Positions 2,609-46,600 of a DNA stretch of 64,000 bases are shown here, one piece after another. The DNA lies in contig NC_047033.1 in assembly GCF_902652985.1 (NCBI RefSeq), positions 6,076,001-6,140,000 on the forward strand, written 5' to 3'. The DNA is from Pecten maximus (Eukaryota). Position numbers and translations under genes: made by a program. The notes beneath the pieces were generated by a model. That model was not told the DNA's origin. It worked only from the letters and a program-made list of their open reading frames with translations, and searched no databases. Every line of letters starts with the position of its first letter. The stretch's first letter is position 1.

Positions 2609-7885
<5,277 letters not shown>

Positions 7886-8317: not shown

Positions 8318-11300
8318 ATGGCGACAACATCCGCAAAGAAAATAAAAGATGCTGGTAGGTTATCATTAATTCTTGACTGTTTTAATTTACATGATAATTG
8401 TCAATGGAAATATGAGTGAGTGCATATTGTATATCATGTAGCCACAGTCAGCTGACACTGTGACAGTAGTTGGCACTACACTTGCAGCGTTATGTTATTG
8501 TTGCGAACTAAGAACTGATATGATTGTTCTTACCATACTTGTAATGTCTTTGTAAAACTCAGTACATCAGGCTACCATTTACACATGTATATCACAGGTA
8601 CTTCACTTGTGGACATGGTTACATAAGAGACCTATATAGTATATAGGTCTCTGGTTACATGTATGATGTTTTTAATCAAAATGTTACATTTATAGACGAG
8701 TAAATTATTGTATTACAATCTCATCATCATGCTTAATTTGTAAAAAAAGATATACCTATCGCACCCTGGCCTTATAAATTAGTATTGTATGTTTATGTTG
8801 TTACATATGTACAGATGTATGCACGAATACTAACAAAATTATGGAAAATATAAATCTACTGTAGGACAATCAACATGACTGTAGACCGTGTACATATTGT
8901 ACTGCAATTTCAGATAATGTTGTACTCACAGTCACTAGACTCGTCTGTCAATAAATGTATGCTGTACGTGTGGACGGGGATATATAAACGGTACTAGAAA
9001 ATACAATAAGACACAGTAAGAGTAGTATTTTTGGTAGTAGTTGAAACCATGTACCCTTCGGCTGGCATGGGCCGAAGGCGGAGGCTAGCGTGACATATAC
9101 AAAGCTATGTTCTATGATTGAATGCTATGTGACCAACGGCCAAGATTTTTGAAAATATCCTGCTCGTACAAATGCTGAGGTGTTAATAGACGTTTATATA
9201 GTGGCTGTGATATATACAGATGTACACGTACATATATATATATATGAGTCAATTTTTAGCCCACCATCATCAGATGGTGGGCTATTCAAATCGCCCTGCG
9301 TCCGTGGTCCGTCGTCCGTCCCTCCGTCCGTCCGTCCGTCCCTCCGTCCGTCCGTCCGTCCGTCCGTAAACAATTCTTGTTATCGCTAATCCTCCGAAAG
9401 TGCTGAAGGGATCTTTCTCGAATTTCATATGTAAGTTCCCCTTGGTGCCTAGTTATGCATATTGCATTTTGAGACCAATCGGAAAACAACATGGCCGACA
9501 GGCAGCCATCTTGGATTTTGACAATTGAAGTTTGTTATCGCTATTTCTGAGAAAGTACTGAAGGGATCTTTCTCAAATTTCATATGTAGGCTCCCCTTGG
9601 TGCCTAGTTATGCATATTGCATTTTGAGACCAATCGGAAAACAACATGGCCGACAGGCAGCCATCTTGGATTTTGATAATAGAAGTTTGTTATCGCTATT
9701 TTTCAGAAAGTACTGAAGATATCTTTCTCAAATTTCATATGTAGGTTCCACTTGGTGCCTAGTTATGCATATTGCATTTTGAGACCAATCGGAAAACAAC
9801 ATGGCCGACAGGCAGCCATCTTGGATTTTGATAATTGAAGTTTGTTATCGCTATTTCTGAAAAAGTACTGAAGGGATCTTTCTCAGATTTCATATGTAGG
9901 CTCCCCTTGGTACTTAGTTATGCACATTGCATTTTGAGACCAATCGGAAGACAACATGGCCGACAGGCAGCCATCTTGTATTTTGATAATTGAAGTTGCT
10001 ATTTCTGAGAAAGTACTGAAGGGATCTTTCTCAGATTTCATATGTAGGCTCCCCTTGGTACTTAGTTATGCATATTGCATTTTGAGACCAATCGGAAGAC
10101 AACATGGCCGACAGGCAGCCATCTTGGATTTTGATAATTCAAGTTTGTTATCGCTATTTCTGAGAAAGTACTGAAGGGATCTTTCTCAAATTTCATATGT
10201 AGGCTCCCCTTGGTGCCTAGTTATGCATATTGCATTTTGAGACCAATCGGAAAACAACATGGCCGACAGGCAGCCATCTTGGATTTTGATAATTGAAGTT
10301 TGTTATCGCTATTTCTGAGAAAGTACTGAAGGGATCTTTCTCAAATTTCATATGTAGGCTCCCCTTGGTGCCTAGTTATGCATATTGCATTTTGAGACCA
10401 ATCAGAAAACAACATGGCCGACAGGCAGCCATCTTGGATTGTGATAATAGAAGTTTGTTATCGCTATTTTTCAGAAAGTACTGAAGGGATCTTTCTCAAA
10501 TTTCATATGTAGGTTCCACTTGGTGCCTAGTTATGCATATTGCATTTTGAGACCAATCGGAAAACAACATGGCCGACAGGCAGCCATCTTGGATTTTGAT
10601 AATTGAAGTTTGTTATCGCTATTTCTGAAAAAGTACTGAAGGGATCTTTCTCAGATTTCATATGTAGGCTCCCCTTGGTACTTTGTTATGCATATTGCAT
10701 TTTGAGACCAATCGGAAGACAACATGGCCGACAGGCAGCCATCTTGTATTTTGATAATTGAAGTTTGTTATTGCTATTTCTGAGAAAGTACTGAAGGGAT
10801 CTTTCTCAGATTTCATATGTAGGCTCCCCTTGGTACTTAGTTATGCATATTGCATTTTGAGACCAATCGGAAGACAACATGGCCGACAGGCAGCCATCTT
10901 GGATTTTGATAATTCAAGTTTGTTATCGCTATTTCTGAGAAAGTACTGAAGGGATCTTTCTCAAATTTTATATGTAGGCTCCCCTTGGTGCCTAGTTATG
11001 CATATTGCATTTTGAGACCAATCGGAAGACAACATGGCCGACAGGCAGCCATCTTGGATTTTGACAATTTAAGATTGTTATCGCTATTTCTGAGAAAGTA
11101 CTGAAGAGATCTTTCTCAAATTTCATATGTAGGTTCCCCTTGGTGCCTAGTTATGCATATTGCATTTTGAGACCAATCGGAAAACAACATGGCCGACAGG
11201 CAGCCATCTTGGATTTTGACAATTGAAGTTTGTTATCGCTATTTCTCAGAAATTGCTGAAGGGATCTTTCTGAAATTTCATTTGTAGGTTGCCCTCTGTG

Positions 11301-14300
11301 CCTAGTTATGCATATTGCATTTTGAGACCAGTCAGAAAACAACCTGCCTGACAGGCAGCCATCTTGTATTTTGACAATTGAAGTTTGTTATCGCTATTTT
11401 ACAGAAGGTACTGAAGGGATCTTTCTGAAAATTTCATATGTAGGTTCCCCTTGGTCCCTGGTGTTGCATTTTGGGACCAATCCGAAAACAACAGACAGCC
11501 ATTATCGCCAAATCTTAAATTTTATATATAGGTTACCCTTGTTTGAAAAGTCCTAGAGGGCTGTTTCTGAATTTACACAGATTAGTAAGACTTAGAGGAA
11601 GGGAAAAGTAGAGAAAAGATCAATCTGACATGGAACCTATAAAGATCATTCAATGGTGGGCGCCAAGATCCCTCTGGGATCTCTTGTTTATGAAGGTTTC
11701 ATCGAAATATCAGATAAACTTATACATTATGAATCCATTTACTCTTGTTTGTTTAAAAAGTCATACTCCTTGTGATAACATTGGCATATCTGTCAAAAGT
11801 TTCTCTGACATGTAATATGTACACATAAAATGTTTGAACAGCTGACTGGGTGTGATATACATGTATATATATATATATATACATGTACCAATGTAGTATG
11901 GTAAAGTGAAGCCCATGGTAAAGTGAATCCCCCATGGTAAAGTGGAGCATTTCGCTATTTTCTTACTAATTCACTTTTTTTCACCAAATATTTTTCAAAT
12001 AACCTTGTTTTATTCCTCTGAACACATTAACACAATAAAAATGTCTGGGGGTCAGGAAAGTTTGGGTGGGGTGTGGCTCTTCACTTTGCTATGGGGGGGT
12101 TCATTTCGCCATAATGGTGAAATGAACCGCGGTTCACTTTACCATTATGGTATTTTGACCCAGGTTCATTTTACCAGGCTTCAAAATACCATGCCACACC
12201 GGTATATATATAGAGGTTACACAACGAGTGGTTGTTGGATATGGAATTTATTTCACACGAGTAAGTTATTTTTTAAAAGTTACAAAAGACACAAGCTTTA
12301 GCGAGTGTTTTTTGCAACTTTTAAAAAATAACTTACTCGTGTGAAATAAATTCCATATCCAACAATTTCGAGTCGTGTGACCTGTTTCTACCACAATAAT
12401 ATCGGCTTGAATCAAAGGGAAACGTGGCCAAGTATTATTTCGCGTATGCAAATAAAGTGTACCGGTGACGTCCGTAACCCGGTGATGTGACGTCATTAGA
12501 TTATTGATGACGTCAATAACAATTGCAGCTTGGGTCAAAGTTCACTGTGTAAGCCAATCGAAATGCGCACAGAGTTTATACCACGTGTGGTATAAACAGA
12601 TTGTTAATCAACAGCTGTAATGATTAACTGATGGTCTGAGAGTTGAATAACACAGGGTATATTGTGGTAGAAATATATATATACCTTTCATCCTGAGGAA
12701 CTTTTTTTTGTAGAAATGTAGAAATGTATATAATATTATATGTATTATATATACAGTTTCCAGTCTATAATAACTTTGTTGTAGGTTGGTTTTACCATGC
12801 CCCGGCTAGGAGGAAGAATGTTGAGCCAGTTCTGGTGCCGCCTACCTCCCAGATTCCAGGACTCAATGATCCTCTGGAGGGTGAACTGATGGGGGACCCA
12901 GTGAGGCCTCTGTACCGTGACACGGACACAAAATATATACGACTTGCCAAACAGGGTGGCAGGCAAAGTAAGTGCACTAATTAATGTATTTGTAAAATTG
13001 GAAAGTATGACTAAGGTCACCTTTCTAGTTCAGACTAACAAGAATTTCCCTTCAGCCTCAGTGGTAATAGGATGCCTGCTTGGAGAGTGAGAATTCTATT
13101 GCTATAGTTTGAGCTAGCACTTGTGCCGTATTAAGTATGGGTTGGGTATCGAGTTGCTTTTGCCCTGATAATATTGCCCAGAAACTTTTGAATACTGGTA
13201 CCAATTGAATTATTGATTGACTTCAGTATTATTAACAATTATCTATTTTTTTGTCAGATTTACTTCAGTTCAAAGAGAATCCAAAAATGTCAGAGAAGCC
13301 TTGTGTGGGATACCCAAGATCAGAATGGTTTTATCTGGAAGACAATGCTATAGAGGATGCTGCCACAGAACCAGATATGAGGTAAGTAGGGAGACTTGTG
13401 GGCAATTAAGCTTTTCTACAGCATTTTTTAGACTATTTTTAATTTGAAAATTACTGTTTTTTGTTGTATTTCAGTATTATATTTAGAAATATCTCTGCTG
13501 TCAATTTTTTTACTGATCTCAATGAGTCTTGGTAAACTAATTTGTTGTGATTTCCAGAGCAACATTAAGATTTGACTAATTTTAAGAGTTATTGCCCCTT
13601 TTTTCCCCCTCCTTTTTTCATTATCTATTCTTGTTTGCTGATCTTTTTCCTTTCAACCATGCATTTTATATATCATGTATATATCTCATGATATGTAGCC
13701 CTTGATGCTTTTTAATATCAGAAGCATTTTTAATTGATTTAACTCTCGATCCTATTCCATTTCCTTAAATCCTAGAAAGATCGAAAGAGCCAGTACGTGT
13801 CTGTTTGTTTGACTTTTATAAGGTGGGAAGTGTGATTAACTCAAGTTTCTCGCGCTGACACCAGACTTGCATCCACATTCTTACAGACATCCAATTGTGG
13901 GAATGTCCAAGTCTGGTGTCAGCGCCAGAGGAAACTCAGACTAGAAGGTGATTGATCACAACAAGCTGGGATATGGTACATTAGGTTTGGAGTGGACAGT
14001 AATATCTCACTCAATATCTTAAAAACCTACATTCCAAGCTGGCTTGTTGTGATTTATGCATCACCATCAATCTTTTTTCCTTAAAAATGTATATACATTT
14101 TAATAGAATGTTATACCAGAGACATATATAGATCTATATATGTCTCTGGTTATACATATATGTACATTGTATGTCACTTTGCATAGGACAAGTGTCTATC
14201 ATGGGTTTTGTTTTTTTTGTTTTTTGTTTTGCCAAAAACGAAAGTTTGAAAGATCAAAGGTTCATTGTATGATGGATTTTGATTGTTACAAATGTACTTA

Positions 14301-17282
14301 CAATGTGATTGTTAAGCTATAAGTCAGACTGGGAGAAAGATAAGGTTAAATAATGTTTGTAATACATGGATTAGTGATCAGTTGTACAAGTGCATGATGA
14401 TCATAAATCAGGTTTTATACTTGTTTTGCAGTAAATATGAGTTCCGGGTCCCAGAATATATGGCCCATGATGTTCACCAAGCCTCAAGAGATGAAAACTA
14501 CCTAAAGGCAGGGCGCACTCCATACGCATATGACAAGCTGTCTGCATACGACAGAGAGGGCAAAAGCTTGAAGGATAAGACCATTAAACTACCAGAGGTC
14601 AAGAGGTCAGGGTATGGGGTGAGGATTGCCAAACCTCCCAGAGTAAAATCCCATCCCCAAGAACGCACAAAGCCTTCAGATGTCGCCAAAATATCACAGC
14701 TGGAGCGAGAAAGACCACATCTGAAATATCTACCTTTGTACGTTTTTGTTACATAATTTTAAGTACTAATTACTGGATTTATCCACAAATAAGCCACTGA
14801 ACACAAAAAAGCCTCACTTCATTTTCTGCAGTATTTATATGTTAGGCTAAAAAAGGTTCATAAGTATTAAGCTACCCCAAACTTGAATATAAAACTTTTA
14901 CACTTAAGAGGAGGTAAAGCGAGGGTCTATACGGATGGAATAACACACCTAGGTGGGACTTAATTGGTGTTCTTGGGTAAATAAATATCTCATTTATCCA
15001 TATATGTAAGGTAGGTGTTTTGTCACTCCCGATTTTATTGTATTAACACCAGATTCTTAGCGACATCAAACAGTGTCGGATAATTCCCCGTTTTATATCG
15101 TAGTGCGCTCTGGCCCTACACCAGATATGGTGTCAGGGCCAGAGGAAACTCAGGCTAAAGAGGAGGTGGCTTATGTGAGGATAAATATAGTAAAATCTTT
15201 GTAAGTTTTTTTTAATTTTCATTTCAAACTATCATACTTATGAAATTATATTTAAGCAGAGACATATATACGTCTCTGGTTTAAGTGCAATGAACTTCAA
15301 TAAATTTTTTTGAAAACTTATAAAATTTGAAAAGTATCAGAAGTTCTTTACAAATCCAAAATAAAGTCTGTAATTATATAAACATGTACCATATTAATTT
15401 TTCTACAATTCGGCTATCATAACTTAGGTAATGCATTTGTTTATATCAGATATGAGGAAGATTAATTGATGAAAGTTGCCCGTTATCTTATACTTTGTAT
15501 CATTCAATGATGCAATAAAATTTGTTGAATTAAAGTCGTAATTATTATTTGTTGGTTATAAATTTATCATGATCACTAATTTTTTTTCTCTTTTATTCAT
15601 TCTTTAAGACCAGAAGAAGAGAAGGACAAGGCGAAGATGTCCAAACTGTTGTCATTTGCATATGACAAAGAATGGCAAGACCGAATCAACAGGTGGCAGA
15701 CACAGCAGGACAAAGTCCGAGACAAACACCGCGCTATGGTGGCTGCTGACACCCAACTCGACAAGGAACCAATTAACACAGAATACAGAACAACCATCGG
15801 CAAACAACTCGGCAGTTCCTATAGACGATCCGAGTATGTGTGCTAGGCAATAATTTTAATTTTGATAAATTGCCAAATTCGATAAACTGGACCAAAACTT
15901 TGCACTCGAGATTGCCAAATTTACCAATTTGATTTGTAGAAGTTGACCATATCATATGTCAAGTTACCTTTGTTATCTAAATTAAAATTAAGACCATGAA
16001 TTGAATTTTCAGATATTTATTTGAGTATAATATATATCTTGTATATTTCAGGAAAGGAAAGAAACAAGGTGAACAGTACTATTCAACACAATCAAATCCA
16101 GAGCAACAAATCTGTGATGCTGGTACAAAGGAAATGTCCAAGAAGGAAAAAGAATTGTTTAAATTGACCAGGTGAAAAGTTACTCCTATGTTTCTTTTTG
16201 TTCTGTCCTTAGACTGTATTGTTATATAAAACTCTATTATAGTTACTAGCACATGTGTATATATATGTGTCATACATATTTTTTTGTGATGTGTTAGATA
16301 AATCTTTTCATACTTTCTTCTAAATAACTCTTAGTTGATTGAATTCTAAAATATAAATCTTTAAAAAATTTTCCAGAAATAATTTCAAAATTTAGATGCA
16401 GCATAGCTGAGATTATAAGCACTTCCAACATATACACGTATAAGCATATGATGAAAGTAAATGAAAAAAAAATCCAAAGTTATATATACATTTGTACATT
16501 ATAAAATGTAAATGCTCATAATGTAAAGCCAAGGAGAGAGGAAACATCCTTTTTAAATGCAATACAATGTGAATTATTTGGGAAAAGGTCTGAATCGCAG
16601 TTTGATTTATTCAGGATTTTATTGTCATTGAAAAAGTGTTTAACATCTCATGTTTGTGAAAATATTCGTCCTAAATGAAATCCAGGTCAAGTAACAATGT
16701 TAACAATATCAATTAAAAAAAAGTGAAAAATAGTAAAATGGAAAAAAGCAAATAGGTTAATTATGCTTATCAAAATGAAAATAATATATGTGGCCTACTG
16801 TGGGTTAGAAATTTGTGCCAAGTCAATGTGGTCCAACCTGTGATATTTACCAGGGATTTAATTCTGATTGACTGTAACAAATTCTAAATTATATGACACT
16901 ATTTTTTATCAAAAAATAATTTTCTGTTATTAAAAAGAATTATCTGATATTTAAGCATTTATTGTATCATCAAATATAGTTATGATGTGAAAGACAATTA
17001 TTTCATTGTGAAAAACAGATAAATGAATCAGAGATAAGCTCTCACAACTGACTTACCAGATCTTCAGGAATCATTTAATCAAACATACATACATTTTTAC
17101 CTTGGTGGAGTCTCAGAAGATTATGCTAAGTTGCAAAGTTGAACAATATTTCACTTGTTTTATTAGACAAAGGCATCTGTATTAATACGTTTTCTTTTCT
17201 TTCTTCCAGATTTAAGAACATCCCTTCTAAGGTTGACTCTCATAATGCTGTGAAGGACGTCCCTGTAGTCACCGCTCATTGA
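8318..17282 (+). CDS. C7orf57: C7orf57-like protein. Exons 8318-8354, 12785-12967, 13258-13381, 14432-14737, 15609-15833, 16052-16171, 17210-17282
   Basis: Seven exons join in frame with GT-AG sites. WFYHAP...PPTSQIPGL...DTDTKYIRLAKQGGRQNLL...Y...EWF and MSKLLSFAY match my recollection of human C7orf57 (WYYH...PPASQIPGL...ETDSEYVKLAKQGGRPDLL). The protein ends LFKLTRFKNIPSKVDSH...VTAH*. Confidence 0.88.
8625..8653. mobile_element. 29-bp palindrome with 7-bp TSD gttacat (candidate P-superfamily footprint)
   Basis: gttacat|aagagacctatatagtatataggtctctg|gttacat. Confidence 0.65.
9253..11689 (+). mobile_element. HINE/Helentron-associated element carrying a 155-bp tandem array (~13.5 copies, ~9380-11480)
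   Basis: 5' tttttagcccaccatcatcagatggtgggcta (subTIR + IR), then (gtcc)n microsatellite, the central array with 155-bp period (9481, 9636, 9791), and 3' ggtgggcg + aagatccc-tct-gggatct stem-loop + T run. Confidence 0.85.
11889..12202. mobile_element. MITE-like element with inverted subterminal atggtaaagtgaa repeats, in a TA-rich site
   Basis: atggtaaagtgaa-like motif x3 on the left, ttcactttaccat/ttcattttacca on the right; ends ccacaccgg|tata. Confidence 0.6.
12211..12672. mobile_element. Non-autonomous element with a long internal palindrome (possibly Crypton-related)
   Basis: Arms ~12232-12290 and 12305-12365 are inverted repeats. They are followed by a tttctaccac...gtggtagaaa IR enclosing TGACGTCA and CCAAT. 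Confidence 0.6.
13838..13944. mobile_element. Short palindromic MITE (related copies ~15105-15157 and ~18649-18745)
   Basis: gcgctgacaccagactt...aagtctggtgtcagcgccagaggaaactcagactag; related arms are seen at two further sites. Confidence 0.65.
14117..14148. mobile_element. 32-bp perfect palindrome with 7-bp TSD gttatac (candidate P-superfamily footprint)
   Basis: gttatac|cagagacatatatagatctatatatgtctctg|gttatac. Confidence 0.7.
15257..15278. mobile_element. 22-bp palindrome with near-perfect 7-bp TSD (candidate P-superfamily footprint)
   Basis: atttaag|cagagacatatatacgtctctg|gtttaag. Confidence 0.6.
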
Positions 17283-18429
17283 TTTAACATGTATTTTTGA
17301 AACAATTTATCCCTTGAAATTAAAACATATTAAGTTATCTGACAATGACAAAACACTTTAAAGTGATATAAAAAGGTAAAGTGATATAAGAAAGAATTCA
17401 TTATCATTGTCAAATATTTCAAAACTTTTAACTTCCGATTTGTGATTCAAAACATAAATTCTGATGAAATATTAACAAGTGCAATATAGATGAGATTCTG
17501 TCTTGTCTCATTTGTAAGCCAAGTGATAAAATTAATATATTTGTACTTCATTTCTCTTAAAACTTTCTTCTTAGTTCATAATTTCATGTATTGGTTTAAG
17601 CCAAAAATACTGTATGTGTGACATTAAGCATGGACATACCATGTGTAGCATGTTTGCACTACATGTAAGCAAGGATTTCATGTCTTTTATTTCAATTTCC
17701 TTAAATTTACTTAATATTCTAAAAAAAGTGCTGATGCATTGTATATTTTCATAGTTTTTACTAAAGATAGTACCTCGTAATTCTTTGTTTGTTAGTCATA
17801 TTCAAATATTTTTGATTTATATCTATTTTGACACATTTAGAATTTGATTTTTGCTAAATAGATGTATAAATTATTCAACATTTAAAAATGAATTTTCAAA
17901 GAATTTGCTGATAAATGTGTATTTTTATTCAAAATATGTATTTTAGTACCAGCTTTCAAGCCATTTGTCATTTATATGCTCTCTTTTGTTTTGGTATCTC
18001 TTTTTTTATGTCATTGTTTTGTTGTTCATTTCTACCCTTGTACATATAACTAAAGCCATTATCCTGAAATAGAGACATATGTTGTTGAAATGTAGAATAT
18101 TTTAAGAGACCATTGGCAGATTTAGAGTCCATCAAAGATTTACACTGAATTCTACACATGCATAAATGCATGTAAAATGAATTCCTTGCAAAGGGAAATA
18201 TTGAAAACAGCAAAATTCCAAGGCCTTTTTTTCTGCCATTGGTTTCTACTGCACGGAAAATCCTATGGAGCCAGAAAGGCCTTGTGGGAAAGTCTTTAAT
18301 TATGCATAAAAGTTTTATGCATGAAGCTTTCAATTTCTACCATATCATTGTTATGAAATATTTATAAATTAATAATTTATGTGTTTCATTATCGTAATCA
18401 ATGAATAATACCAAAATCTCTTTACTCAG

Positions 18430-18473
<44 letters not shown>

Positions 18474-19675
18474 GTATATGTTCGTCCCTGCTTTGTATTT
18501 GAAATTGTCTTCCTCTGTAAACTGCAAGAAGTTTTTGTTAGCTTGATAATATTAAAGTTTGTTTTAAATTAAAAACAAATTGGTTATCGTTTTGCTAAGT
18601 TTTCATGAACAGGTATTTTATTGCAAATTTAAGTTGCATTTATTAACACTAACCCAAGTTTACTCTGGCCCCGACACCAGTCATGGACATTCTGACTGAT
18701 AGATTCACCTACAACAGACATTTATCTGTTAGAATGTCCAAGTCTACGGGGACCAGGGGGGATAGGGCTGATATCTATTGATGTGAAAAAGAGAAAGAAG
18801 CGATGAGAGAGGAATGTAAGCATCATGTTTTACGTTTATTGGAAAATCAAATTTGACAGCCCCCCCCCCCCTCAGAATAAAACTTAATATTTTATCTTTT
18901 ATATTTTTTTCCCTTCACAAACACCCTTTTAACAAATCAGAAACAGTATTTTACCAAGAAGGAAAAGCCAAAATAATTTATACTATATGAATATATAATT
19001 GTATATATAAAATATATATTTTGAAACAAGTGATCGTTGCATTTTCTTTTTTTTAAATTGAAGCAATCACTTTAAATTTTTACTATTTCAGCCAAGCAAA
19101 TCTAAACAGAAATGGTACATGTGTGACTACATGTAATAGATATGTGATAATTGATAGGAAGAGTGGAATGCAACAGAAACTGCATGAACTATTGGTACTT
19201 GTAATATCCTGCATAAAGAAATCAGAATATTTTTGGTTTTTAACTTCACATGGAGTCCTGTACTATAAAGATATTACATGTATATGTTATGAGATAGTCA
19301 ATAAAATAAAACATTATATAAATTTCAGAATATGTTCTTGTTTTTCCTCCCAAGCAACATACACTTTATAATGTTACAGCGCCGACAGCTACAAATGTCG
19401 TCTGCATAAAGGACGTTTTATATATTAGTTATTAGGTAGAGTTAAATTGATGGAAATGAGCATGAAGACGCGTCACGTAAGTTTCACATCTTTGGAGTTC
19501 TCATTCTATGACAACCTGGGATACTTTGTCCAGAAAGTCTAGGCACATTAATAGGAACTGACGTTTACAATTGGCACTATCGAATGTTAGCTGGTCTGCT
19601 CCAAGAACTCACAAGAAACATTTCGTCATTCATGTTCAAAATGTTTATGAAACAATCTGCTCCGAATGAGTTTAT

Positions 19676-43636: not shown

Positions 43637-46600
43637 TCATTTTCGTGCAAGCATATAATAACAGGAATCAAAACCCAGGTATTTGGCATCATATTCAGAT
43701 TCTGCCACCTCTTCTGCTGCCACAATGTCAAATCCAACTTGTCGCATTGTTGATTGTAACTCTTCCCTAGTAATGGAGAGCGCACGATATTTATACTCTC
43801 CAATTTGGTAATTATCACCGTTCAAACAAACAAAAAGAATAAGATAACCACCCTTCTTAAGGAGGGAGGCTACATTTTCAAGGCATTTCCCATATTCTTC
43901 CACTGTAAACACCGCTGTCTCGATACAGTAGCTAGATATAATGATGTCGAATTGTGTGTCGTTGTACGTGTCTCCAAGAGGTTTTGATTTCGTCACATCC
44001 ACGGGAAGAATGCCTTTCACTTTACTTCTTATCTCCGTCTCTCTTTGTCTGGCAGTCATCCTTTATTTAAAAAAGGAGAAAACTTCAATAACCTAACACC
44101 GGTATTATTGTACAGTTATAGGATATACAGCTACAGTGAATCAAACATGAGTATTCAGTTAATTACGCCATATTTCTTTTCTGGCACTACGTATTTGCTC
44201 TACGTTTCACGAAAAAAATAAAATTTCTGTAAGGCCTGCTGAAAGTTTCTTTTGGATCATTTGCTTTTTAGCCATCAGAAAATCTTCGTTAAAACGAAGT
44301 ATTAATTAAATCTTGTAAATGACATACATTGTTATTAACACATTTTGGTAAGATCTATTTTAGTTTTTCGTTGTCAGCCCTATTGAGTACACCAATGAGA
44401 CTACAACCCTGATTTAATACTGTAAAGAAGTTAAATCATATTACAGTGTGTTATTTTAATTATCGCAGTAATACTGTAAAGTTTTTAATATTTGCGTTGG
44501 ATTTAATTTCGCTATACTCGATGTCATTAAATATAGCGCGAAAATAAATAGCCAGCCAATGTTTGAATGCACACACAATTGTACAGAAATGTTTTAGTTA
44601 ATACCCGCAAAATAGTTTCGACTGGAACAACTGCGAACTAATAGCACCGTGAAATTTAAGAACTCTACAGTATTTTAGCGTAATAATGCGAAAAACATAT
44701 AAACTGGGTTTTCACGAAATACGCATGTTCTAGCAGTGTGACATAGCAATTGATTTCAACTTACGTTCGTTCTTCAAGGCTCATAACGTAATCTATCAAT
44801 TTTGTAGGTTGGTTAATCAATTGATTTCAACTTACGTTCGTTTTTCAAGGCTCATAACGTAATCTATCAATTTTGTAGGTTGGTTAATCTCCCCCTCAAG
44901 CCATTTCTCTAAATATTGGAGATTCTGTGGAAGGTAGTCTGAGAGGTAGATCTCATCCACGTGATTATAAGCCGTGATCAGTGTGTGAATAGTAGGACCA
45001 GTACCCACATCCAATAGGCGTTTACCGCTTACGTTGTCTGAAATAATAAACAAGTGTCTTATATGATATAGATCTAGACTTAATAGATTTAGCATTCACT
45101 GTTTATATGTAGTAATATGAACATTGATTGTATTGTCTAAAACATATGTTTTTTTTTCTGGTTTTATGGCCCCGTGAACAGCTAGGGTCATTTTGAGCGG
45201 CAGCTCATTGTAGTAGTTAATGACTACCTCACTTAACAACATAGGGGAGACCCGTCACATGCCAAAATTAAGGTAAAGTGTCTTGCTCAATAACAAAACC
45301 ACGACAGCAGACAGGCCCGTTTCTCGGCTTCCGGGGGCCGCGGTGGCCGAGTGGTTAAGGTGTACCGACACTTTATCACTAGCCCTCCACCTCTGGGTTG
45401 CGAGTTCGAAACCTACGTGGGGCAGTTGCCAGGTACTGACCGTAGGCCGGTGGTTTTTCTCCGGGTACTCCGGCTTTCCTCCACAACCTGACACGTCCTT
45501 AAATGACCCTGGCTGTTAATAGGACGTTAAACAAAAACAAACCAAAATTCTCAGCTTAGAAATTAAAACCGGCACTGTTAGGGAGCGCCGAACCACGCAT
45601 CTCAGATCTTCACCTGAGGCGCTCTAACCGACTGAGATATCGCGGCCCCTAGTCAAAGAGTTTGAGTAAAATAATAGAGCCACACTCTGACTATTGTTTG
45701 TAACAATCGTTAACGCCTTCACGTTGGACGCTGTCTCTTGGTCAGTATGTTATATACATGCAACTAATGTTGTGAGTCAGTTGTTACATATCATGTATAC
45801 TGCAAATCACTTGGATTTCGCGAATACTTTATTGCACGAATTTACCACTTTAGACCACGGGCGCTTGCATAGAAAAAGAGAATTAAAACAAGAAATATTT
45901 AAAAAAAAAGATAAACGGCATAGTTTAAATGCTGGTGTTTATAATATAAAACTGCTGGTGAAATAAATGAACGAACTAATGTGTTTCAGCACAGATAACA
46001 AAATTATATCAGTTTGAATCATTTTGGTGATAATACCATGCACGTAGCCAAGTTATTTTGTATGTGTATGCAGAGAAATGAAATGAGGGGTGAATGAGTA
46101 CCGTATATGATATACAGTCAAGTGTTGGGACAATTTAGGTCCGTCATTTAACGATGTCCGAATAGTTACGTTGTCCTGTTTTCTTGAAACGACGAGCCTT
46201 GTACAGCATTTAGAATGATAATTTGTGTTGAATTGACCTTATTTTGCACGCTTGGAACACGTTTACATAATGTCCGAATATGTGTTCAATAACCATACGT
46301 ACATAACAATAGTCCATTGGGCAAAGCAATACCTTCCCTGTGGGAAGGGCTGTAAAAGAAAGAAATCAAGACCAAAAACCTGAGATCAACCTTGTATTTA
46401 AGTCGCGTTACCGTAACACAACGTTTTGATATGATCATTGCGACAATGGGTGATGTTTTCATGACGGTATGTGTAGGTAAAATACATTTATATATAAAAA
46501 TACAGTTGTAGTTATAAAAGTTCCAGGAGAATCGAATTGAATTTAATATAAATGAACTTTTTAACTGTACAGGTGGTCATAACATAGCACGACATGTGTT

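What the first reader, a model, noticed from the sequence alone, without database searches (positions are those of the whole stretch)
8618..18497. Cluster of ultra-short CAGAGAC...GTCTCTG palindromes with 7-bp TSDs: candidate P-superfamily (Galileo/THAP9-like) excision footprints
Seen: three 22-32-bp palindromes in introns of the C7orf57-like gene, at 8625-8653 (TSD gttacat), 14117-14148 (TSD gttatac) and 15257-15278 (TSD rtttaag). A diverged fourth copy lies at 18427-18490. Known: P-element transposase leaves 17-nt 3' overhangs of the TIR at the donor site, so end-joined footprints keep up to ~17 bp of each TIR between the TSDs. Galileo-type P elements make 7-bp TSDs with a GTnnTAC-like palindromic preference. 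Inference: the sizes (16+16, ~14+15, ~11+11), joins inside TA microhomology, and GTTATAC-like targets fit repaired excision scars of a bivalve P-like family rather than MITEs. Four in 10 kb of one gene suggests a germline hot spot or local hopping.
Basis: partly seen in the sequence, partly recalled or inferred. Interest (0 to 1): 0.8.

Follow-up and report, generated by a model that had tools for sequence, protein, structure and literature searches.

The report
Transposon excision scars in scallop introns
The tiny palindromes in this king-scallop gene are most likely scars left where cut-and-paste transposons jumped in and out again, and thousands more across the genome keep about 16-17 bases of each transposon end, as the fruit-fly P element does when it excises.

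Summary
Three of the four reported palindromes are real: window 8625-8653, 14117-14148 and 15257-15278, with 7-bp duplications matching 7/7, 7/7 and 6/7. The fourth (18427-18490) is doubtful, with flanks matching 4/7.

They belong to a genome-wide population. CAGAGAC...GTCTCTG pairs 18-48 bp long number 3416 against 178 for the control pattern, but only 235 against 146 at 49-79 bp. Long elements carry the same ends: a 4-5 kb family and a family of about 0.9 kb. Both are flanked by 7-bp duplications and neither encodes a transposase.

In the 4-5 kb family the terminal 17-mer occurs at least 1295 times. Only 264 occurrences reach base 19, and 205 of those run through all 31 bases of the inverted repeat. 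This sharp break fits end-joined excision scars after a cut about 16-17 nt inside each end, as in P elements.

The scars cluster genome-wide. The palindrome at 14117 is missing from another individual's contig.

No P/THAP9 transposase could be tied to these ends, so P membership is inferred, not shown.

Earlier notes of this scan (s1-786403, s1-802597, s1-792030, s1-792263) reported the same kind of scars elsewhere in this genome.

The parts
8618..8660 (.). Scar 1: TSD gttacat (8618-8624), a 29-bp palindrome (8625-8653) and TSD gttacat (8654-8660). Arms are of family B (CAGAGACCTATATA...). The first base is mutated C to A.
   Evidence: The same 29-mer class appears at 7 of the 59 short family-B palindromes I hand-tabulated.
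14110..14155 (.). Scar 2: TSD gttatac, a perfect 32-bp palindrome (14117-14148, 16+16 nt of the family A terminus CAGAGACATATATAGA) and TSD gttatac.
   Evidence: Family A parents have the TIR CAGAGACATATATAGAGAGAT. An X5 contig from another sample bridges the site with 51 window bases replaced by 5.
15250..15285 (.). Scar 3: atttaag, a 22-bp palindrome (15257-15278, one arm A-type and the other G-type at position 8) and gtttaag. It lies in the GT..AG intron 14738-15608.
   Evidence: An X4 contig spans 15135-15574 with 0 gaps, and spliced contigs of X14 and X7 join 14737 to 15609.
18427..18490 (.). Doubtful fourth copy: CAGGGAC...(TA)n...GTCCCTG, 64 bp, with flanks matching 4/7.
   Evidence: The CAGGGAC class is enriched genome-wide (530 against 147). 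An X5 contig shows 25 gap letters here, which fits (TA)n length variation.
14430..14737 (+). Context: a coding exon of the host gene, open in frame 0 and followed by gt.
   Evidence: (spliced contigs). Pfam gives only a weak DUF5524 hit, E 0.0063, below the curated cut-off.
15609..15833 (+). Context: the next coding exon, preceded by ag and followed by gt.

Best explanation
Each short palindrome marks a place where a non-autonomous cut-and-paste transposon with CAGAGAC... terminal inverted repeats inserted and later excised. Insertion made the 7-bp target duplication. At excision the transposase cut the transferred strand at the element's tip and the other strand about 16-17 nt inside the inverted repeat. 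Both flanks therefore kept a single-stranded tail made of the element's last 16-17 bases. End joining of the two tails left the two duplication copies around two short inverted arms. Sometimes joining used 1-2 nt of microhomology, sometimes it trimmed the tails, and sometimes it added a few filler bases. This is how the Drosophila P element excises, so the families most likely belong to, or are mobilised by, the P/THAP9 superfamily.

Shown: the scars, their parent elements, the 7-bp duplications, the break in arm length, the clustering, and the polymorphism at one site.

Inferred: the staggered cut itself and the identity of the transposase.
For: (1) Abundance and length cap. Lengths 18-34 bp give 2427 matches (control 117), 35-48 bp give 989 (control 61) and 49-79 bp give 235 (control 146).

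(2) Parents. Three family B copies of 4065, 4250 and 5072 bp have a 31-nt TIR and perfect 7-bp TSDs. At least 211-260 candidate copies exist, and the 40 scored are 96-100% alike. Family A parents are 0.6-1.8 kb.

(3) Break at 17-18 nt. The family B 17-mer has 1295 hits even under a 3/4 filter, the 19-mer has 264 and the 31-nt TIR has 205.

(4) In the first 100 rows, 13 rows are parent ends, 75 rows are 59 short palindromes and 12 are other. Of the 59, 42 are 34 bp or less and 17 are 36-40 bp, the latter being two full arms plus 2-6 bases. The commonest form (18 of 59) is 32 bp, which equals 17+17 minus a TA overlap, or 16+16.

(5) TSDs: 19 of 31 candidate pairs are 7/7 and 5 are 6/7.

(6) P element transposase makes a 17-nt staggered cut at both TIRs (passage in PMC2577343). 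Galileo, a P-superfamily element, makes 7-bp TSDs (passage in PMC2775673).

(7) P/THAP9-type transposase genes are present: 44 PF21787 matches and an ORF with all three TNP-like domains.

(8) A transposon family that does encode such a transposase (family g, 372-bp TIRs) has 14 solo end-to-end palindromes against 0 for the control.

(9) Scar 2 is absent from another individual's contig.
Against: No transposase was found between CAGAGAC ends. The three family B copies I read hold only a reverse-transcriptase fragment.

None of the 30 P-type loci holds a CAGAGAC TIR. The two P-type transposon families whose ends I could read end in CACAGGTCC... and CCCGTTTCTGG....

The CACAGGTCC family has 0 short palindromes. 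Those of family g are longer, 34-52 bp with 5 more at 53-79 bp, which does not fit a 17-nt cut neatly.

CAGAG termini are, from recall, typical of hAT elements rather than P elements.

29% of the scars (989 of 3416) exceed 34 bp. In family A the arm usually stops at 16 nt, not 17. Some family D forms could carry 18-20 nt arms.

The X5 contig lacks 46 net bases rather than the 39 expected of a clean empty site.
Confidence: 0.55

Rival explanations
1. The palindromes are excision scars as described, but the enzyme is not of the P superfamily. It could be a hAT-related or an uncharacterised transposase that makes 7-bp duplications and also cuts far inside the inverted repeat.
For: The termini begin CAGAG, which from recall is the hobo/Hermes/Tol2-type hAT motif. 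No P-type gene could be tied to these ends. hAT transposase domains are plentiful, with 134 matches. The cleavage chemistry of many superfamilies is unknown.
Against: The TSD is 7 bp, not 8. Known hAT excision hairpins the flanks and leaves no TIR bases (established knowledge, recalled). None of the 134 hAT hits lies inside the family A or B parents or the long family B pairs that I compared by coordinate. The nearest is a weak hit (E 3.3e-4, 2 stops) 6.9 kb from a solo family A end on C2.
Confidence: 0.25
2. The palindromes are internal-deletion derivatives made by abortive gap repair. After excision the break is copied from the sister copy, and synthesis stops early at both ends.
For: Deletion derivatives do exist. 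There is a 73-bp family A element keeping more than 30 nt of one end (L046). There is a pair of 19-mer ends about 120 bp across on C2. There are family B elements of 852 and 1090 bp.
Against: Such a process predicts a broad, continuous spread of retained lengths. Instead, at least 1031 of at least 1295 occurrences of the 17-mer stop before base 19, and at most 59 fall between 19 and 30 nt. Counts also drop to near control above 48 bp.
Confidence: 0.1
3. The palindromes are themselves mobile micro-MITEs of 20-40 bp that amplify as such.
For: Identical forms recur at many sites, each with its own TSD. The 32-bp family B form is at 18 of 59 tabulated sites. A 33-bp family C form recurs.
Against: Lengths form a ladder (23, 27-34, 36-40 bp), with nearly all differences at the centre and the outer 14 nt constant. 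The recurrent forms are those predicted by joining two 16-17 nt tails. Elements this short lack the subterminal binding sites that known transposases need (general knowledge).
Confidence: 0.05

Closest known systems
Drosophila melanogaster P element and its excision footprints
   Same: The 17-nt staggered donor cut leaves TIR bases at the empty site (PMC2577343 passage). P has a 31-bp TIR (recalled) and family B has a 31-nt TIR. Both have many non-autonomous copies, and local clustering of insertions is also known for P (recalled).
   Different: The TSD is 7 bp rather than 8. The termini are CAGAGAC rather than CATGATG (recalled). No linked transposase was found. Here the scars are fixed or polymorphic genomic fossils in their thousands, not laboratory revertants.
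Galileo / 1360-type P-superfamily elements
   Same: Both make 7-bp TSDs; the Galileo consensus is GTAGTAC (PMC2775673 passages). This genome holds Galileo-like P-type transposons with long TIRs of about 600 and 372 bp.
   Different: The CAGAGAC families have short TIRs (31 nt) and unrelated termini. The target consensus here is only a weak nTTnAAn.
hAT elements (hobo, Hermes, Tol2)
   Same: The terminal motif is CAGAG (recalled), the TIRs are short and there are many non-autonomous copies.
   Different: hAT elements make 8-bp TSDs and their footprints lack TIR bases (recalled). Here the TSDs are 7 bp and the arms are 16-17 nt.
Tc1/mariner canonical footprints
   Same: The scars are made of transposon end bases kept between the duplicated target.
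   Different: Tc1/mariner scars keep only 2-3 nt per end and sit in a TA target (recalled). Here 11-17 nt per end are kept.

Membership tests
P superfamily (P / Galileo / THAP9) | Target site duplication of 7-8 bp | tested here: met
   19 of 31 candidate pairs are 7/7 and 5 are 6/7. That count includes 3 of 3 long family B parents.
P superfamily (P / Galileo / THAP9) | Donor cut about 17 nt inside the TIR, so scars keep up to about 17 nt per end | tested here: met
   Family B: the 17-mer has at least 1295 hits, the 19-mer 264 and the 31-nt TIR 205. Counts are 2427 at 18-34 bp, 989 at 35-48 bp and 235 (control 146) at 49-79 bp. The cut is inferred from the scars and was not measured. Family A arms stop at 16 nt.
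P superfamily (P / Galileo / THAP9) | A THAP / RNase H-like transposase with a GTP-binding insertion domain, encoded between the TIRs | tested here: inconclusive
   0 of 3 family B copies read encode it. 0 of 30 P-type loci show a CAGAGAC TIR within about 1.5 kb. No PF21787 hit (44) or PF21789 hit (11) lies at the parents I compared by coordinate. The flanks of most P-type loci could not be fetched.
P superfamily (P / Galileo / THAP9) | Palindromic target motif centred on the TSD | tested here: inconclusive
   24 sites show T at position 2 (14/24), T at position 3 (17/24) and A at position 6 (20/24). This was hand-counted. The sample is too small and the region too AT-rich to decide.
hAT superfamily | 8-bp TSD | tested here: not met
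   The flanks match over 7 bp and an 8th base does not match. For example, aatgttatac|...|gttatacata at site 2.
hAT superfamily | Excision through flank hairpins, leaving no TIR bases | tested here: not met
   The scars consist of TIR arms.
MITE (a mobile miniature element as such) | A homogeneous unit that transposes and amplifies as a whole | tested here: not met
   There is a ladder of lengths with variation confined to the central junction. Mobility itself cannot be tested here.

The most novel reading that the evidence does not exclude
The king scallop carries a fossil record of several thousand germline excisions, concentrated in hot spots, by transposon families that have no transposase of their own in the assembly. 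They may be mobilised in trans by TIR-less, low-copy P/THAP9-type host genes, which would make these genes working 'domesticated' transposases. Families a, b, d and e look like such genes. The unusual cut about 17 nt inside the end would then be conserved from insects to molluscs. The palindromic scars also seem to seed minisatellites.
Probability: 0.2. Interest if true: 0.8.

Novelty: new variant of a known kind. Interest (0 to 1): 0.6.

Why it matters
If the reading holds, the deep staggered cut known only from P element biochemistry can be read directly from a wild mollusc genome. The ratio of scars to living copies would measure how often such transposons excise, and how the germline repairs the breaks by end joining with short microhomology and filler. 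The scars mark insertion hot spots in introns and promoters. They are polymorphic, so they are useful markers. They also add small perfect palindromes, and sometimes tandem arrays, to genes. Finally, the finding points to a search for the responsible enzyme among the scallop's THAP9-like genes.

Tried and rejected
Ideas and searches that led nowhere:

- I looked for an autonomous parent. tblastn of 47 ORFs from the P-type loci against three family B copies found nothing. Pfam on 10 ORF pieces of L056 found only an RVT_1 fragment.
- I mapped copy ends by BLAST of whole loci against the genome. Family c is an element of about 11 kb with TIRs of about 600 bp and the terminus CACAGGTCC. Family g is about 6.8 kb with a 372-bp TIR and the terminus CCCGTTTCTGG. 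Families a, b, d and e showed no TIR.
- An end reading CAGAGACATATATAGA+CTCAGAGCG, seen at three places, looked like a candidate long element. It lies inside a Harbinger-like repeat (HTH_Tnp_4 and DDE_Tnp_4, both below cut-off). The homology of that repeat starts upstream of the motif, so I dropped it.
- As a positive control, the CACAGGTCC family gave 0 short palindromes.
- I compared the 134 hAT domain hits with the parents' coordinates and found none inside them.
- Two long family B pairs, C3:15698664-15706759 (8.1 kb) and C9:18059450-18068448 (9.0 kb), could not be read.
- I considered reaching the flanks of the P-type genes through the search for homologous proteins followed by the look-up of encoding contigs.
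- Papers: searches returned no paper describing genome-wide P-type scars or these families. I saw those papers as listings only. PMC10294476 has 0 occurrences of 'P element', 'THAP' or 'footprint'.
- Beall & Rio 1997, Staveley et al. 1995 and O'Hare & Rubin 1983 are recalled, not seen.
Full report
**What is in the window.**
- Site 1: 8625-8653 is 29 bp, between two copies of gttacat.
- Site 2: 14117-14148 is a perfect 32-bp palindrome between two copies of gttatac.
- Site 3: 15257-15278 is 22 bp, between atttaag and gtttaag.
- Site 4: 18427-18490 has CAGGGAC/GTCCCTG ends around a (TA)n run. Its flanks agree at only 4 of 7 places, so I leave it as doubtful.

The host gene runs on the + strand. 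Contigs of runs X14 and X7 join 14737 directly to 15609. The two stretches are open reading frames bounded by gt and ag. Site 3 therefore lies in an intron. The gene's name rests only on a weak DUF5524 hit (E 0.0063, below the cut-off). That DUF5524 is the C7orf57 family is my recollection.

**Which genome.** G000 has 918,306,378 bases in 3,983 contigs, and its longest contig is 60,076,705 bases. These are exactly the figures of the Pecten maximus assembly (passages of PMC7191990).

**More than chance, and capped in length.**

| Pattern and total length | Matches per strand | Control (reversed pattern) |
|---|---|---|
| CAGAGAC...GTCTCTG, 18-48 bp | 3416 | 178 |
| of these, 18-34 bp | 2427 | 117 |
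| of these, 35-48 bp | 989 | 61 |
| CAGAGAC...GTCTCTG, 49-79 bp | 235 | 146 |
| CAGGGAC...GTCCCTG, 18-48 bp | 530 | 147 |

The population ends abruptly just under 50 bp. About 71% of it is at or under 34 bp.

**Families and parents.** The sequences fall into families by the bases after CAGAGAC:
- Family A continues ATATATAGA.
- Family B continues CTATATACTA.
- Family C has TTGTATATCAG at one end and GTATATACC at the other.
- Family D continues GTGTATATCA.

For family B I listed the terminal 17-mer with the next 18 bases (1295 hits under a filter that passes three of four letters at the last place). I sorted the first 100 rows by hand:
- 13 rows are ends of long elements (next bases GGGAYTCGCRACAA).
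- 75 rows belong to 59 short palindromes.
- 12 rows are something else.

I fetched three long copies:

| Length (bp) | Flanking 7-bp TSD |
|---|---|
| 5072 | ctataat |
| 4065 | ttataac |
| 4250 | cctgatt |

They have a 31-nt inverted repeat (97% complementary) and are 92-98% alike. BLAST of either end finds 211 and 260 candidates. The 40 scored in each search are 96-100% identical. The ends pair at 4.0-4.9 kb, with one pair at 2.7 kb and one at 9.0 kb. These copies hold no transposase, only a reverse-transcriptase fragment on the other strand.

Family A, to which site 2 belongs, has parents of 0.6-1.8 kb. Their inverted repeat reads CAGAGACATATATAGAGAGAT. Family D has a recurring long-element end reading ...ATCACGTAACAG.

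**The break in arm length.** For family B:

| Terminal stretch | Occurrences |
|---|---|
| 17-mer | at least 1295 |
| 19-mer | 264 |
| full 31-nt repeat (two degenerate places) | 205 |

At least 1031 occurrences therefore stop at 17-18 nt, and at most 59 stop anywhere between 19 and 30 nt.

The 59 tabulated palindromes have these lengths:

| Length (bp) | 23 | 27 | 28 | 29 | 30 | 31 | 32 | 33 | 34 | 36 | 37 | 38 | 39 | 40 |
|---|---|---|---|---|---|---|---|---|---|---|---|---|---|---|
| Sites | 1 | 6 | 1 | 7 | 2 | 2 | 18 | 1 | 4 | 6 | 3 | 5 | 1 | 2 |

For those longer than the 35-nt view I inferred the end. Seven of them are confirmed.

The 32-mer is what two 17-nt tails give when they pair through their terminal TA, or what 16+16 gives by direct joining. 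The 29-mer, which is the form at window site 1, needs a TA overlap after trimming one tail by 3 nt. The forms of 36-40 bp are two complete arms with 2-6 extra bases between them. One site alone carries bases 18-20 of the repeat.

In family A the arm usually stops at 16 nt, and window site 2 is 16+16. In family C the commonest 33-mer is 17+17 with a 1-nt overlap. Some family D forms may hold 18-20 nt. I therefore put the cut at about 16-17 nt, with uncertainty up to 19.

**Duplications.** Over the window and all loci, 31 CAG[AG]GAC...GTC[CT]CTG pairs were examined: 19 have 7/7 flanks and 5 have 6/7. Four of the remaining seven are plainly chance pairs with no palindrome. The 24 good sites give only a weak target pattern: T at places 2 and 3 and A at place 6. 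The Galileo consensus GTAGTAC (PMC2775673) shares the T at place 2 and the A at place 6.

**Clustering.** Among the 50 sites listed on the first 19.6 Mb of contig 1, 7 of 49 neighbour gaps are 2 kb or less, against 0.25 expected (0 of 20,000 simulations reach 7). Clusters mix families. The window does too: site 1 is family B, site 2 is family A, and site 3 is a hybrid of A-type and G-type arms. That points to regional hot spots more than to one element hopping locally.

At the genome-wide density, two exact matches in 9.9 kb are expected in about 61 bins of the genome by chance alone. The window's cluster is therefore an instance of a general habit, not an oddity.

**Other individuals (contigs only).**
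- In run X5, a different sample, one 1835-nt contig at single-copy depth lies on 13145-14116 and on 14168-14983 with 5 letters between.
- The 51 window bases it skips include the whole 32-bp palindrome and the second duplication copy. A clean empty site would lack 39 bases, not 46, and that haplotype differs by many small indels. I read this as absence of the scar, not as proof of an ancestral empty site.
- In run X4, one contig reaches 14144 inside the palindrome, and another spans site 3 without a gap.

**Mechanism and its rivals.** A ladder of lengths that differ only at the centre, a hard limit inside a longer inverted repeat, joints at 1-2 nt overlaps, and filler bases are together what end joining of two fixed-length single-stranded tails predicts.
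- Abortive gap repair predicts a continuous spread, which the 17/19/31 counts contradict. A few true deletion derivatives do exist, at 73, about 120, 852 and 1090 bp.
- Mobile micro-MITEs predict uniform units with scattered mutations.
- Among transposases whose chemistry is known, only P makes a 17-nt staggered cut (passage in PMC2577343; the rest from recall).
- hAT elements share the CAGAG tip, but they make 8-bp duplications and leave no repeat bases behind.

**Is it a P element?** The genome has 44 matches to the P/THAP9 RNase H domain and 11 to the C-terminal part. One 962-aa ORF has all three TNP-like domains.

Two families are real transposons with long inverted repeats: family c, with the terminus CACAGGTCC, and family g, with the terminus CCCGTTTCTGG. 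Neither has the CAGAGAC end. Families a, b, d and e look like low-copy genes without inverted repeats.

As controls, family c has no short palindromes (0 against 0). Family g has 14 against 0 at 34-52 bp and 5 against 0 at 53-79 bp. A family with a P-type enzyme therefore does leave end-only palindromes here, but they are longer than 34 bp, and I could not read them.

No hAT domain hit lies within the parents I could compare either. Membership therefore remains an inference from the 7-bp duplication and the scar anatomy.

**Earlier notes and novelty.** Four earlier notes of this scan describe the same kind of scars at other places in this genome and reach the same reading. I tested the core claims myself.

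The paper searches found no description of such scars in molluscs, but supplements were closed. I rate the finding as a new variant of a known kind. The scar type is known from Drosophila genetics. Its mass survival in a wild genome, the 7-bp/CAGAGAC families and the missing transposase are new.

Noticed in passing
L048 (G000 C1:11139527-11142584), locus positions about 1501-2560: A tandem array of about 1 kb built from a 17-bp unit, made of the family A terminus plus CAG (CAGAGACATATATACAG). It has more than 60 copies and starts at a scar-like palindrome. Similar arrays appear at C12:41340806-41341554 (period 31-35 bp), C2:34622688-34622798 (28-bp units) and C1:31846285-31846852 (CAGGGAC type, period 32 bp). 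Scars seem to seed minisatellites.
   Followed up: partly
window 14870-15243: A very high-copy repeat in the same intron as site 3. Summed contig depth reaches about 2x10^5 in runs X4 and X5, with many loose ends at 15157-15158. I did not classify it.
   Followed up: no
L053 (G000 C1:29544300-29554290) and the C17:30081252-30097237 copy: A Galileo-like P-type transposon of about 11 kb. Its terminal inverted repeats are about 600 bp and its terminus is CACAGGTCCTAGCC. It has three ORFs of 617, 785 and 356 aa, and the 785-aa ORF carries TNP-like_RNaseH_N. At least 6 copies are near-identical.
   Followed up: partly
L034/L036/L060/L061 (G000 C8:17173007-17179773): A second P-type transposon family of about 6.8 kb with 372-bp inverted repeats and at least 8 copies 92-99% alike. 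Its flanks in this copy do not form a clear 7-bp duplication.
   Followed up: partly
L058 (G000 C4:12432580-12438079): A Harbinger-like repeat (HTH_Tnp_4 and DDE_Tnp_4, both below cut-off) with inverted repeats of about 85 bp. It carries, inside itself, 16 nt of the family A terminus, and this internal stretch has been copied with it to several loci. A protein-like minisatellite lies at locus positions 2655-4783.
   Followed up: partly
L051 positions 104-941 (G000 C5:3889403-3890240): A repeat of about 840 bp with about 210-bp internal periodicity. It has thousands of candidate copies at about 90% identity (2972 first-look candidates, though these are for the whole 10-kb query).
   Followed up: no
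L027+L059+L028 (G000 C6:47238580-47246684): Two copies of a P/THAP9-type gene (ORFs of 711 and 807 aa) lie head to head as a 2.9-kb inverted duplication, 99.65% alike, around a 207-bp spacer. No transposon ends are visible.
   Followed up: partly
window 45886-45975: A 95-bp stretch 82% identical to the interior of the family B element (L056 2144-2238). It is probably a shared older repeat.
   Followed up: no
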